A stretch of 63,089 nt of DNA, filler included, from Octopus bimaculoides (taxonomy: Eukaryota), in NCBI RefSeq assembly GCF_001194135.2. It is 5 parts of 5 records of this genome, joined end to end, with 100 filler letters (N's around TTAATTAATTAA, not from the genome) between each part and the next. Parts side by side here need not be neighbours in the genome. Positions count along the whole stretch, not along the records: positions 1 to 31,227 come from NC_068998.1; 4 more parts are not named here. One strand, written 5' to 3'. Both the position numbers and the translations under genes were made by a program. Every line of letters begins with the position of its first letter. Position 1 is the first letter of the stretch. Positions 16,195-30,087 of this stretch are shown one piece after another. A model generated the notes under the pieces. That model was given only the letters and a program-made list of their open reading frames with translations, was not told the DNA's origin and ran no database searches.

Positions 16195-16485
16195 TTCAAG
16201 GGTTGGACAAAATGATGGAAACACCTAGCATCATAGCTCCCTAATTTTGAAATATCTATAAAACCGTCACAAGCGTATCTATTTTTATTTTTTGTTTTTT
16301 AATTTATTATTAGTGTTGCTGAATAATCCTTCACCATCATCACTACAAGAACTGGAGACTGTTTTAGCTGAAGAATGGACGAAAATTCCTTTGGAAAAAA
16401 TTCAAACTTTGTACGAGTCCATAGAATTCAAACTGTAGAATTCAAGCTGTAATTACTGCCAAAGGCGGTCCTACTCTATATAAAT
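16195..16485 (+). mobile_element. Internally deleted Tc1-like element (TIR-like start plus transposase C-terminus)
   Basis: caagggttggacaaaatgatggaaacacc resembles a Tc1 TIR. Downstream reads NPSPSSLQELETVLAEEWTKIPLEKIQTLYESI...RIQAVITAKGGPTLY*. Confidence 0.7.
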
Positions 16486-25864: not shown

Positions 25865-26092
25865 CACCTCCTCTTACTCCTCTCCTCCTCTTACTCCTCT
25901 CCTCCTCTTACTCCTCTCCTCCTCTTACTCCTCTCCTCCTCTTACTCCTCTCCTCCTCTTACTCCTCTCCTCCTCTTACTCCTCTCCTCCTCTTACTCCT
26001 CTCCTCCTCTCCTCCTCTTACTCCTCTCCTCCTCTTACTCCTCTCCTCCTCTCCTCCTCTTACTCCTCTCCTCCTCTTACTCCTCTCCTCCT
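25865..26092. repeat. 17-bp pyrimidine-rich minisatellite (cttactcctctcctcct)n
   Basis: Directly visible tandem copies. Confidence 0.9.
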
Positions 26093-26994
26093 CCTCATTC
26101 TCATCATCATCTTGTTGTTGTTGTTGTTGTTCGTCTTCTTCTTCGTCTTCGTCTTCGTCTTCTTCTTCTTCTTCTTCTTTACCTCCACAAATATACATCA
26201 ATACAATTANNNNNNNNNNNNNNNNNNNNNNNNNNNNNNNNNNNNNNNNNNNNNNNNNNNNNNNNNNNNNNNNNNNNNNNNNNNNNNNNNNNNNNNNNNN
26301 NNNNNNNNNNNNNNNNNNNNNNNNNNNNNNNNNNNNNNNNNNNNNNNNNNNNNNNNNNNNNNNNNNNNNNNNNNNNNNNNNNNNNNNNNNNNNNNNNNNN
26401 NNNNGTCTTCTTCTTCTTCTTCTTCTTTACCTCCACAAATATACATCAATACAATTATCACTACCTTCTACTCAACATAAGCAATAAACTGAAATGAGAC
26501 TGTCTGTTGATTTCGAGATTAGTATTGTATATAATAAATATTACGTAACATAAATGCTTCAACGTTCACACACATACACTCGCGCACTTTGTCACACACA
26601 TGTATACACATATATATGTGTACATACACATATACATATACACAGAGACACAGGCAGATATATACACACGCACGTATATATATAAACTTAAACATGTTTG
26701 TGTGTGTCTCTGTCTGTATACATGCAAGTTGGTCAAACATATGCTAACATTTATCGATAACTCCATGAATAAGTTTCATAACATATCATTTACATCACAG
26801 TTCCCTCGAAATGTAGTCGAACATAGAAATCTTAAAACAACTACAAAAGTTTCGCTAAACATATCAAATCTCTTATGTTCCCATCGATCGCAAGGTTACC
26901 AACAGGTGAATGTCACGTAGACCAAACTAATCACACTGACAGCACCATTGGTATCGGCAAGTTTTCATACGATGTTGCTGATTAAAAATATTCT

Positions 26995-28317
26995 AAGAAG
27001 TTTGCGCCTGTAGGCTACAAACATCATTCTACTTTGTTACAGTTATAATATCATTACATGTATTTATGGCCATTTTATTTCCAGTACAGAGGAGTCTCGC
27101 GTGGAAAAACTTCGATCATCAGAGTTATGATGATAAAAAATTTTCCACGAGAGACTGCACATGTATCACAGCAACAATGATGTTCCCTACCACAAGTGTC
27201 ACAATAACCCTGGTGTCACTCAACACAAGTACTAAGGTTTTTATGCAGATATTAATTACAAACATCACGGCTACCACGGACTCAACATAAATATTATTAT
27301 AACCAAGACGTTATTTTGCACTAATGTTACGATAATTACCACATTAATATAAACACAATTCACGGCAGCCACGACGTTAATGTGCACAAACAGAGCAGTT
27401 ATGAAATTGTTTTGCAAAGATATCGCGGCAGCCATGACGTTAATATGGACGAGTATCGCGGTAGCCATGACGTTAATATGGACGAGTATCGCGGTAGCCA
27501 TGACGTTAATATGGACGAGTATCGCGGTAGCCATGACGTTAATATGGACGAGTATCGNNNNNNNNNNNNNNNNNNNNNNNNNNNNNNNNNNNNNNNNNNN
27601 NNNNNNNNNNNNNNNNNNNNNNNNNNNNNNNNNNNNNNNNNNNNNNNNNNNNNNNNNNNNNNNNNNNNNNNNNNNNNNNNNNNNNNNNNNNNNNNNNNNN
27701 NNNNNNNNNNNNNNNNNNNNNNNNNNNNNNNNNNNNNNNNNNNNNNNNNNNNNNNNNNNNNNNNNNNNNNNNNNNNNNNNNNNNNNNNNNNNNNNNNNNN
27801 NNNNNNNNNNNNNNNNNNNNNNNNNNNNNNNNNNNNTAATATGGACGAGTATCGCGGTAGCCATGACGTTAATATGGACGAGTATCGCGGTAGCCATGAC
27901 GTTAATATGGACGAGTATCACGGTAGCCATGAAGTTATATTGCAAAAATATCATGGCAGTCATGGCGTTAATATGCATAAATATCACGGTAGTTATGGCG
28001 TTAATAATTACAAATATCACAGTGGCCATGATATTATTAACTATAAATATCACGGTTGCCATGGGGTCGCGCAACACAAATGTCATAACATTATTTTGCA
28101 CATATACGACAGAAGTCACAGCGTTAATATGCACAGTTATCACAACAGGCATGACGTTAATGTGTAGTGATATATGTGGTTTCATTACTCTGATTATCAA
28201 AGTTTTCCTACGAGTGACTCCTCTGTACGGGAAATAAAATGGCCATAAGCATATGTAATGCTATTATAACTGTAACAAAGTGGAGTGATGTTTGTAGCCT
28301 ACAGGCGCAAACTTCTT
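26995..28317. repeat. 130-bp inverted repeat pair (26995-27124 / 28188-28317) enclosing a 30-bp tandem array
   Basis: Manual alignment is ungapped with 13 mismatches in 130 bp (~90%). The outer 32 bp are identical (aagaagtttgcgcctgtaggctacaaacatca). Confidence 0.9.
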
Positions 28318-28630
28318 CGACATGAAGTTATTTTGCATAAATATCGCGGCAGACATGAATTTCTTTTGCGAAAATATCACGGTAGCTATGGCGTTAAGGT
28401 GGACAAATATCAAAGCGGCCATGGCGCTAATAATTACAAATATCCCGGTAACCATGAAGTTATTAACTACAAACATCACAGCTGCCATGGCGTCACTGAC
28501 TATAAATAACATAACAACCATGATGTCATTTTGCACCAATATCACGGTAGCTATAGTGTTAATATGCACAAATACCGCAGTAGTCATGGCGTTAATATGC
28601 ACAAATATCATGGTAGCCATGATGTTACTA
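27160..28630. repeat. 30-bp minisatellite, consensus approx. tatcacggtagccatgacgttaatatgcacaaa, with a homogenised core (gagtatcgcggtagccatgacgttaatatggac) across the gap
   Basis: Identical units at 27430-27557 and 27837-27918. Diverged units flank them on both sides and resume at 28320-28630. Confidence 0.9.
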
Positions 28631-28964
28631 AACATAATTGGATTTACTAAACGTAATAGACAGATGCCATGTAGATTGTAAAAAACTATCAGAGAAAAAC
28701 ACTAACAAAAACCTGAATATCACAAAACTGACGCAGTTATAAAATAACAGAGTAATAATACGTAGAGTAAGAAGAATGTCTCAAACAGTATGACAGTTAC
28801 CAGACTAAAAATTACAGTTATTTATTACAGTTATATATTATAATTACCAAATCAAAAATATCACAAGATATAACCTGTTATAAAGATACTGACTGCAGCA
28901 GAATGACTGCATGTACGCCAAAAAAAATTTATCATGTTATTATAGTTACAAGACCATGAATATA

Positions 28965-29541
28965 TGCACTACCCGGTTAGGGGCCGGCAAACTACGATCC
29001 GAGAGCCATATCTAGCTCTCGTTCACGTGTCATCTAACACACACACACACTTTATTGATGTATGATACAAAAACAAAATTTCTTTATTTTTTTAATCGAT
29101 CTTTGGTTATCAATCAATAAAATTCAGTGGAAAAAAAAAAGGGAAAATTTTTATTTTTAGTGTAGCATCAAATGAATAAATGTTTTAAATTAATATGAAA
29201 AATAGAGTGATTTAAAACATTTTTTTTTTGTGTTGAAAAAATATCAGTTTTTCCAGGTGGTGTATCTAAACAATAAATGTTACAGGATTGGAGCTGTCAG
29301 AGACGAATAGCAACTCGTACGCTATTGAAATTTAAGTGGCATGAAGAACCAATTCTAAGAAAAGTAGGTTTCACAAACATGGTTATTTACCTGTTGCGGA
29401 AAGTAGATAACTAGAAGGTACTACAATTACCAGCAAAATCTGCACTACTAGGTTAGCGGCCGGCAAACTACGGCCAGAGAGCCAAAACCAGCTCGCGTTC
29501 ACATGTCATTCAACACTTTATTGATGTATGATACAAAAACA
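28965..29541 (+). mobile_element. Two direct copies of a hAT/Charlie-like terminal sequence (28965-29085, 29441-29541)
   Basis: tgcactac..ggttag(g/c)ggccggcaaactacg..cgagagcc...tttattgatgtatgatacaaaaaca occurs twice. ggccggcaaactacggcc is typical of hAT-Charlie ends. Confidence 0.6.
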
Positions 29542-29883: not shown

Positions 29884-29926
29884 CAATAATAATAATAATA
29901 ACAATAACAACAACAGCAGCAGCAAC

Positions 29927-29986
<60 letters not shown>

Positions 29987-29998
29987 AACAACAACAAC

Positions 29999-30087
<89 letters not shown>
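29884..30087. repeat. (TAA)n/(CAA)n trinucleotide microsatellite
   Basis: Directly visible. Confidence 0.95.

What the first reader, a model, noticed from the sequence alone, without database searches (positions are those of the whole stretch)
26995..28630. Composite element: 130-bp inverted repeats bracketing a higher-order 30-bp tandem array that continues beyond the right arm
Seen: inverted arms at 26995-27124 and 28188-28317 (~90% identical, ungapped). Between them and after the right arm is a 30-bp array. Its diverged units recur in the same order in three blocks (in one frame INYK-GVxxHK-xILH-xVNMH..., near 27230-27430, 27920-28165, 28320-28630), while one unit variant is amplified to near-identity across the gap. 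No clear TSD. Established: fold-back elements and Helentron/HINE- or pearl-type non-autonomous elements carry internal tandem arrays and seed satellite DNA in molluscs. Inference: this is an unnamed satellite-carrying mobile element, or a satellite being born, inside an intron of the channel gene. As pre-mRNA, the arms could pair into 130 bp of dsRNA, a possible ADAR substrate.
Basis: partly seen in the sequence, partly recalled or inferred. Interest (0 to 1): 0.7.

Follow-up and report, generated by a model that had tools for sequence, protein, structure and literature searches.

The report
Minisatellite with an inverted flank copy
This is a real but ordinary non-coding 33-bp minisatellite; a 139-bp piece of its left border also sits, upside down, inside the array, and nothing shows that the whole thing is a mobile element.

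Summary
The sequence features are real, with corrections. The inverted arms are 26992-27130 and 28182-28320: 139 nt, ungapped, 89% complementary. The array period is 33 bp, not 30.

About 32 units are sequenced between 27157 and 28638. One unit variant is 99-100% identical on both sides of the N gap. It is on the same strand and in phase at the stated gap length. Its copy number is unknown (5 or more).

An eight-unit higher-order pattern is supported between blocks 27916-28170 and 28342-28605 (permutation p=0.003). It is only weakly supported for the left block (p=0.06).

The composite mobile element reading is not supported:
- The right arm splits one 33-bp unit. Removing it restores the array register to within 1 nt.
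- The array on either side of the right arm (73% identical) is more diverged than the arms are from each other (89%).
- The left arm borders unique sequence.
- The outer ends carry no target-site duplication.

The copied segment ends in the loop of a 29-bp hairpin at the left border.

My best reading is a locus-specific minisatellite that took up an inverted, templated copy of its own flank. Later, one unit was amplified.

Genome-wide copy number, transcription and gene context could not be tested. No coding signal, Rfam family or homologue was found. Interest is low.

The parts
26992..27130 (-). Left arm. It is contiguous on its left with unique sequence that is unrelated to the array.
   Evidence: 139 nt, 89% complementary to 28182-28320. 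The left flank 26700-26991 shows no array similarity in either orientation. The arm is unrelated to the 33-bp unit.
27093..27156 (.). Hairpin at the left border of the array: stem 27093-27121, loop 27122-27127, stem 27128-27156. The second stem is a 29-nt partial arm copy in the orientation of the right arm.
   Evidence: Inverted pair I2, 83% complementary. Folding 27085-27165 gives -34.6 kcal/mol, z = -7.1 against shuffles. Arm homology stops at 27130, at the far edge of the loop, 3 nt into the second stem.
27157..27420 (+). Left block: about 8 degenerate 33-bp units, the oldest layer of the array.
   Evidence: Wrap-around segmentation. 60-65% identical to the other blocks. Stop codons in all six frames.
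27421..27557 (+). Homogeneous run, left of the gap (4.2 units).
   Evidence: TRF finds 99% matches. Units listed.
27558..27836 (.). Assembly gap (279 N) inside the homogeneous run.
   Evidence: In phase at the stated length. The contig ends overlap by 51 nt.
27837..27915 (+). Homogeneous run, right of the gap (2.4 units).
27916..28170 (+). Middle block: one higher-order copy of 8 diverged units.
28171..28181 (+). First 11 nt of the unit that the right arm splits.
   Evidence: The distance 28171 to 28342 is 171 = 139 + 32.
28182..28320 (+). Right arm: an inverted copy of the left arm inserted inside one array unit. CAT is present at both junctions.
28321..28341 (+). Remaining 21 nt (unit positions 13-33) of the split unit.
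28342..28638 (+). Right block: 9 diverged units. Units 1-8 are colinear with the middle block. The array ends at 28638.

Best explanation
This is a locus-specific, non-coding 33-bp minisatellite with three layers of history.

1. An old array was organised in an eight-unit higher-order repeat, which was duplicated. The copies are now about 73% identical.
2. Later, a 139-nt stretch of the array's own left border was copied in reverse orientation into one unit about 1.05 kb (arm to arm) downstream. The stretch starts in the loop of a 29-bp hairpin. I infer a replication or repair template switch (microhomology-mediated templated insertion, MMBIR/FoSTeS type) that used 2-4 nt of shared sequence at the junctions. 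The two copies are now 89% identical.
3. Most recently, one unit variant was amplified by slippage or unequal exchange into a run that is 99-100% identical. The short-read assembler collapsed that run into a gap.

Shown: the structures, the in-phase interruption and the relative divergences. Inferred: the template-switch mechanism and the direction of copying (left to right). No function is implied. The inverted pair may make the locus unstable. If the locus is transcribed, the pair would form a mismatched duplex of about 139 bp.
For: - The arms are 139 nt, ungapped and 89% complementary, and occur only twice in 31 kb.
- The right arm sits between 11 nt and 21 nt of a single unit. Deleting 139 nt restores the 33-nt register to within 1 nt. 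Treating the CAT found at both junctions as shared gives exactly 33 nt.
- The blocks on either side of the right arm are colinear higher-order copies at 72.6% identity (74% outside CpG-prone columns). They are more diverged than the arms.
- The left arm abuts unique DNA with no array similarity.
- Arm homology ends just past the loop of a strong hairpin (z = -7.1).
- The array is not coding. There is no period-3 conservation (p=0.36). The left block has stops in all frames. There is no Pfam hit and no homologue in 5.8 billion proteins.
- Each arm lies inside a contig together with array units of known polarity, so the inversion does not depend on scaffolding.
Against: - Only one locus is available, and the copy number of the arm in the genome is unknown.
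- The relative ages rest on divergence. Gene conversion between the arms, or faster decay of the array, could distort them.
- The junction is ambiguous by about 3 nt, so a 3-bp target-site duplication (CAT) from a transposon insertion cannot be told apart from microhomology.
- The 11-nt left part of the split unit is a poor match to the consensus (6 of 10 positions).
- A register match within 1 nt has about a 9% chance of occurring by accident.
Confidence: 0.45

Rival explanations
1. The arms are two independent insertions of an uncatalogued short dispersed repeat (a transposon fragment or MITE-like element of at least 139 bp, possibly with a terminal hairpin). One copy is at the array border and one is inside the array, in opposite orientations.
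For: - The right arm behaves as a clean insertion into a unit, with CAT on both sides.
- 89% identity is typical of copies of an ageing repeat family.
- The hairpin next to the left copy could be a terminal structure that the right copy lacks.
Against: - There is no third copy in 31 kb.
- The arm has no terminal inverted repeats of its own, no A-tail and no tRNA-like part.
- The left copy has no matching duplication at its ends.
- Two hits by a family rare enough to be otherwise absent here, 1.05 kb apart on the same minisatellite, is an unlikely coincidence.
Confidence: 0.25
2. One reading: a non-autonomous mobile element whose 139-bp terminal inverted repeats enclose a tandem array. It would be analogous to HINE/pearl or fold-back elements, and it moves or seeds satellite DNA.
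For: - Long inverted arms are associated with a tandem array.
- Tandem-repeat-carrying Helentron derivatives are common in bivalves (PMC7492417).
Against: - The array continues for 10 units outside the right arm. That part is an old higher-order copy of the part inside.
- The right arm interrupts a unit in phase.
- There is no target-site duplication at the outer ends.
- Of the HINE substructures, only a palindrome is present, and it lies about 100 nt from the nearest end. No 11-12-bp subTIR-plus-IR pair was looked for and no microsatellite was seen. The monomer is 33 bp, against the 100-500 bp screened in PMC7492417, where the main clusters are 140-180 bp.
- There is no Helitron 3' CTRR end.
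- The arms contain no subrepeats.
- No other locus was found.
Confidence: 0.12
3. Assembly artefact: the small contig 26405-27557, or a path inside a contig, is misplaced or chimeric, so the two arms are not really 1 kb apart in inverted orientation.
For: - The two arms lie on different contigs, separated by a gap inside a collapsed repeat.
- This assembly demonstrably leaves artefactual gaps and duplicated contig ends.
Against: - The left contig is anchored to its upstream neighbour by an exact 53-nt overlap. It joins the right contig by a 51-nt overlap in the same unit variant and strand.
- Each contig on its own shows the orientation of its arm relative to array units.
- The arms differ at 15 sites, so they are not one sequence used twice.
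- The hairpin stems share no exact run long enough to fold a de Bruijn path.
Confidence: 0.08
4. The array is a coding exon that encodes an 11-residue repeat protein.
For: - Two frames stay open through the middle and right blocks. The simulated chance of one 297-nt block staying open is 0.09 and 0.40 for the two frames.
- An exhaustive HMMER search gave three weak hits to proteins with 11-residue repeats.
Against: - There is no period-3 conservation.
- The left block is broken in every frame.
- There is no Pfam hit or word-based homologue.
- The weak hits share 17-35% identity and only the periodicity. Two of them were read: in each, an 11-residue repeat is attached to an unrelated part, a receptor kinase or a mariner transposase tail.
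Confidence: 0.02

Closest known systems
Minisatellite (VNTR) loci with higher-order structure and locally homogenised runs
   Same: - A short unit (33 bp) in a kilobase-scale array at a single locus.
- Diverged variant units in a repeated order.
- A recently amplified, near-identical run that short reads cannot resolve.
   Different: - It carries an inverted copy of its own flank inside the array.
- Polymorphism between individuals was not tested.
Templated, often inverted, insertions from replication template switching (MMBIR/FoSTeS) and hairpin- or quasi-palindrome-associated switching. This comparison rests on my own knowledge of these mechanisms.
   Same: - The insert copies sequence from about 1 kb away, in reverse orientation.
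- There are 2-4 nt of shared sequence at the junctions.
- The source breakpoint lies at a hairpin loop.
   Different: The event is old (11% divergence) and is inferred from one assembled haplotype. No ancestral or empty-site allele is available.
HINE / pearl / Cg_HINE non-autonomous Helentrons of bivalves and DINE-1 of Drosophila (PMC7492417)
   Same: - A tandem array sits between conserved flanking modules.
- One module carries a palindrome.
- The host is presumably an invertebrate. The taxon was not identified.
   Different: - The known elements have 11-12-bp subterminal inverted repeats rather than 139-bp arms.
- They have a microsatellite in the left flank.
- Their main monomers are 140-180 bp.
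- Their array is strictly internal.
- They occur at many loci.
None of these was found here. Dispersal could not be tested.
Fold-back (FB) elements
   Same: Long inverted arms and an association with tandem repeats.
   Different: In FB elements the arms themselves are built of tandem subrepeats, in mirror orientation. Here the arms are unique sequence and all array units point the same way.

Membership tests
HINE / Helentron non-autonomous element | An 11-12-bp 5' subTIR with a nearby complementary IR, followed by a microsatellite in the left flank | tested here: not met
   The feature list comes from PMC7492417. By reading the sequence, no microsatellite lies between the arm and the array (27131-27163). 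The inverted repeat is 139 nt and terminal, not a short subterminal pair. No dedicated subTIR/IR search was run.
HINE / Helentron non-autonomous element | A 3' subTIR followed by a palindrome close to the element end | tested here: inconclusive
   A strong palindrome exists at 27093-27156. It lies about 100 nt from the nearest candidate end, and no short subTIR pair was defined.
HINE / Helentron non-autonomous element | The tandem array is confined between the two flanking modules, with satellite-size monomers | tested here: not met
   Ten units lie outside the right arm. The monomer is 33 bp, against the 100-500 bp screened in PMC7492417, where the main clusters are 140-180 bp.
HINE / Helentron non-autonomous element | Many dispersed copies with the same flank-array combination, and a conserved insertion site | not testable with these tools
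   The host genome is not in any searchable collection. Pattern scans of metagenome, prokaryote-genome and viral contigs found nothing relevant.
Helitron | A 5' TC and 3' CTRR end, a short 3' hairpin, and insertion between A and T | tested here: not met
   Both strands start with TC, but they end in TCGA and TAGA, not CTRR. The flanking bases are T and C rather than A and T.
MITE / TIR transposon | Terminal inverted repeats flanked by a target-site duplication | tested here: not met
   Inverted repeats are present, but the outer flanks ...AAAAATAT and CATGAAGT... show no duplication.
Fold-back element | Arms composed of tandem subrepeats in mirror orientation | tested here: not met
   TRF finds no repeat inside the arms. 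The arms are unrelated to the unit. All units are on one strand.
Minisatellite with higher-order repeat | Head-to-tail units of 10-100 bp at one locus | tested here: met
   TRF reports period 33. About 32 units are sequenced.
Minisatellite with higher-order repeat | Variant units recur in the same order | tested here: met
   Middle versus right block: 72.6% on the diagonal against 58-69% off it, p=0.003. The left block is weak, p=0.06.
Templated inverted insertion (MMBIR/FoSTeS type) | The insert is identical in origin to nearby sequence, inverted, with junction microhomology | tested here: inconclusive
   The source lies 1.05 kb away, is inverted, and TCAT/CAT and GA are shared at the junctions. 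A 3-bp target-site duplication gives the same picture, and no pre-insertion allele is available.

The most novel reading that the evidence does not exclude
The arm plus the 33-bp array is one copy of an uncatalogued family of non-autonomous elements that carry and spread a minisatellite. It would be a functional analogue of bivalve HINE/pearl elements with unusually long inverted ends. This locus would then be a copy in which the array has outgrown one end.
Probability: 0.12. Interest if true: 0.5.

Novelty: new member of a known kind. Interest (0 to 1): 0.2.

Why it matters
As it stands, this is a routine piece of repetitive non-coding DNA. Its main practical value is as a caution for anyone annotating this assembly:
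- The gap hides an array of unknown length.
- Two nearby 'repeats' are artefacts of overlapping contig ends.
- Gene predictors can read through such 33-bp arrays, because several frames stay open.

If the inverted copy is confirmed as a templated insertion that starts at a hairpin tip, it would be a tidy natural example of hairpin-associated template switching inside a minisatellite. If the arm turns out to be dispersed together with the array, it would point to a new repeat-carrying element family.

Tried and rejected
- **Coding repeat.** Rejected. There is no period-3 signal, the left block is broken in all frames, and there is no Pfam hit or homologue. Three weak HMMER hits reflect only the 11-residue periodicity.
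- **Larger palindrome.** I tested whether the inverted duplication extends beyond the arms into the left flank. It does not. The alignment score of 11 equals the shuffled mean of 10.7.
- **Arm derived from the array unit.** It is not.
- **RNA families and tRNA-derived SINE heads.** No Rfam or tRNA hit was listed in 26992-28638. The Rfam hits elsewhere lie on microsatellites and fall below the gathering scores.
- **Related loci.** Exact-pattern scans of metagenome, prokaryote-genome and viral contigs gave nothing for the arm or the unit. The one exception was a chance 21-mer inside a Paenibacillus gene.
- **Gene context.** A 4462-residue concatenation of the window's open segments gave no protein hit. 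Pfam gave only a sub-threshold mariner transposase fragment. The 'channel gene intron' claim could not be checked.
- **Organism.** It could not be identified.

Full report
**Observation**

The window around the finding was read directly and scanned for tandem and dispersed repeats.

- The inverted arms are real. They span 26992-27130 and 28182-28320, 139 nt without gaps, with 124 of 139 positions complementary.
- A sensitive BLASTN of each arm against the whole 31-kb piece finds only these two copies (E = 8e-42). It also finds a short partial copy next to the left arm.
- The 15 differences are 8 transitions and 7 transversions.
- The tandem array has a period of 33 bp, not 30 (TRF).

**Gap**

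The N run 27558-27836 lies inside a run of one unit variant (TATCGCGGTAGCCATGACGTTAATATGGACGAG).

- There are 4.2 units on the left and 2.4 on the right, on the same strand, with a single mismatch in total.
- With 279 N the register is preserved exactly (429 = 13 x 33).
- The N count is only an estimate. The last 51 nt before the gap equal the first 51 nt after it.
- Two other gaps in this piece, 12082-12091 and 26210-26404, are flanked by identical 118-nt and 53-nt contig ends. This assembly therefore sometimes inserts Ns between contigs that actually overlap.
- The homogeneous run holds at least 5 units, and 15 if the N count is right. Continuity of sequence type and strand is supported. The length is unknown.
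- The 53-nt overlap anchors the small contig that carries the left arm to its upstream neighbour.

**Anatomy of the array**

A wrap-around alignment to the unit consensus divides the array into these parts:

| Part | Coordinates | Content |
|---|---|---|
| Left block | 27157-27420 | About 8 degenerate units |
| Homogeneous run | 27421-27557 and 27837-27915 | 99-100% identical units, split by the gap |
| Middle block | 27916-28170 | 8 diverged units |
| Split unit, first part | 28171-28181 | 11 nt |
| Right arm | 28182-28320 | 139 nt |
| Split unit, second part | 28321-28341 | 21 nt, unit positions 13-33 |
| Right block | 28342-28638 | 9 diverged units |

Unique sequence follows the right block.

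- The middle and right blocks are colinear. A local alignment gives 72% over 267 nt.
- In a unit-by-unit matrix, same-rank pairs average 72.6%, against 58-69% for shifted ranks (permutation p=0.003).
- The left block aligns colinearly at 60-65%, but its rank test is weak (p=0.06).

**Is it coding?**

Three of the six frames are open in the consensus unit. Two of them stay open through the middle and right blocks. Under a random-substitution simulation, one 297-nt block stays open with probability 0.09 and 0.40 for those two frames. That is mildly unusual but not compelling, because the two blocks share ancestry.

Against coding:
- Conservation along the 33 columns shows no three-base periodicity (p=0.36).
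- The left block has stops in all six frames.
- Pfam finds nothing.
- A word-indexed search of 5.8 billion proteins, using all three open frames plus an arm frame, finds nothing.
- An exhaustive HMMER search of 1.84 billion representatives returned three weak hits at 17-35% identity. I read two of them (P0001 and P0003). Each has its own 11-residue tandem repeat attached to an unrelated part, a receptor kinase or a mariner transposase tail. These matches reflect periodicity, not homology.

I reject the coding reading.

**What the arms are**

- The arms share nothing with the array unit in either orientation.
- They contain no internal tandem repeats.
- They give no listed Rfam or tRNA match.
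- By eye they have no terminal inverted repeats or A-rich tail of their own.
- The sequence left of the left arm (26700-26991) has no similarity to the array in either orientation. The alignment score is 11, against a shuffled mean of 10.7. The left arm is therefore the left edge of the whole repeat complex.

**The right arm is an insertion into the array**

- The distance from the start of the split unit (28171) to the start of the next full unit (28342) is 171 nt, that is 139 + 32. Removing the arm restores the 33-nt register to within one base.
- CAT occurs at both junctions (...GGTTTCAT|TACTC... and ...TTCGA|CATGAAG...). If it is counted once, the rejoined unit TATATGTGGTTTCATGAAGTTATTTTGCATAAA is exactly 33 nt.
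- Its 3' part matches ordinary units at 16-17 of 21 positions.
- The blocks on the two sides of the arm are old copies of each other. They are 72.8% identical overall and 74% outside CpG-prone columns. The arms are 89% identical.
- On face value the array, including the part 'beyond the right arm', predates the arm duplication.
- The arms therefore do not behave as the termini of an element that carries the array.

**The hairpin**

Immediately after the left arm lies a 29-nt partial arm copy in the opposite orientation (27128-27156). With 27093-27121 it forms a hairpin with a 6-nt loop.

- Folding 27085-27165 gives -34.6 kcal/mol, z = -7.1 against shuffles.
- Homology between the two long arms stops at 27130, at the far edge of that loop, 3 nt into the second stem.
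- At the six stem positions where the two long arms differ, the short copy pairs with the left-arm state at four (read). It therefore belongs to the left-arm lineage.

**Most likely history**

1. An old 33-bp array acquired an eight-unit higher-order repeat, and that repeat was duplicated.
2. A 139-nt stretch of the left border, starting at the hairpin loop, was copied in reverse orientation into one unit about 1.05 kb (arm to arm) away.
3. One unit variant was recently amplified.

Step 2 is best explained by a replication or repair template switch that used 2-4 nt of shared sequence (TCAT/CAT on one side, GA on the other). The structures and their order are shown. The mechanism and the direction of copying are inferred. 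I give this reading 0.45.

**Rivals**

- **Two insertions of an uncatalogued dispersed repeat (0.25).** This fits the clean, CAT-flanked interruption and the 89% identity. It requires two hits by an otherwise locally absent family on the same minisatellite, and the arm shows no transposon hallmarks.
The array outside the arm, the in-phase interruption and the lack of a target-site duplication count against it. So does its failure on the testable features of HINE elements as listed in PMC7492417, of Helitrons and of fold-back elements.
- **Misassembly (0.08).** This is unlikely. Each contig shows its arm's orientation relative to array units, the arms differ at 15 sites, and the contig overlaps anchor the order.
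- **Coding exon (0.02).** See above.

**What could not be done**

- The source genome is not in any collection I could search. Pattern scans of metagenome, prokaryote-genome and viral contigs gave only one chance 21-mer in a Paenibacillus gene. The decisive count of arm and unit copies in the genome, and a Dfam/Repbase comparison, remain open.
- No exon was detectable in the 31 kb. A 4462-residue concatenation of open segments gave no hit. Pfam gave only a sub-threshold mariner fragment. The 'intron of a channel gene' statement and the ADAR idea are untested.
- The arms could certainly pair. An RNA cofold gives -197 kcal/mol, against -57 ± 4 for shuffled arms.

**Verdict**

The feature is real, and the description needed correcting: period 33, with the right arm inside the array rather than bounding it. 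The kind of structure is ordinary: a minisatellite with an inverted flank copy. Interest is low unless genome-wide data show that the arm and the array travel together.

Noticed in passing
window 11964-12081 / 12092-12209 and 26157-26209 / 26405-26457: Identical 118-nt and 53-nt sequences sit directly on both sides of the N gaps 12082-12091 and 26210-26404. These are overlapping contig ends left unmerged by the scaffolder. TRF's 128-bp 'tandem repeat' at 11964-12210 and the direct repeat D7 are assembly artefacts.
   Followed up: yes
window 28947-29075 and 29422-29541: Two direct copies, 78% identical, of a ~125-bp sequence that contains GGTTAG.GGCCGGCAAACTACG...GAGAGCCA. This is probably a dispersed repeat family unrelated to the arms or the array. 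ARAGORN finds no tRNA-like part.
   Followed up: partly
window ~6678-7212 (+): A decayed mariner-type transposase remnant, spread over three frames (for example ...PDSSPSDYHLFRNIKKRL...). The Pfam Transposase_1 match has E=0.0011 and 19.3 bits, below the 24-bit cut-off.
   Followed up: partly
window 16262-16435 (+): The segment ...SLQELETVLAEEWTKIPLEKIQTLYESI... resembles the C-terminus of Tc1-like transposases. This is from memory only, and Pfam gave no hit.
   Followed up: partly
window 25867-26093: A CT-rich 17-bp tandem repeat (CCTCCTCTTACTCCTCT; 13 copies, 96% matches). (TTG)n and (TTC)n runs follow it, just upstream of the finding.
   Followed up: no
window 29885-30087: A long (AAT)n microsatellite of about 68 copies, 94% pure. 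The piece is generally dense in AT, AC, ATCT and ATGT microsatellites. These account for all Rfam 'miRNA' hits (mir-297, mir-466 and others), all of which fall below the gathering scores.
   Followed up: yes
P0001 residues ~238-560; P0003 residues ~134-237: Two unrelated database proteins contain long 11-residue tandem repeats (RYAQLFVNNNG; LYCxSNSLCTT). One is a receptor tyrosine kinase-like model and the other has a mariner transposase C-terminus. They look like gene models that read through 33-bp minisatellites in other genomes.
   Followed up: partly
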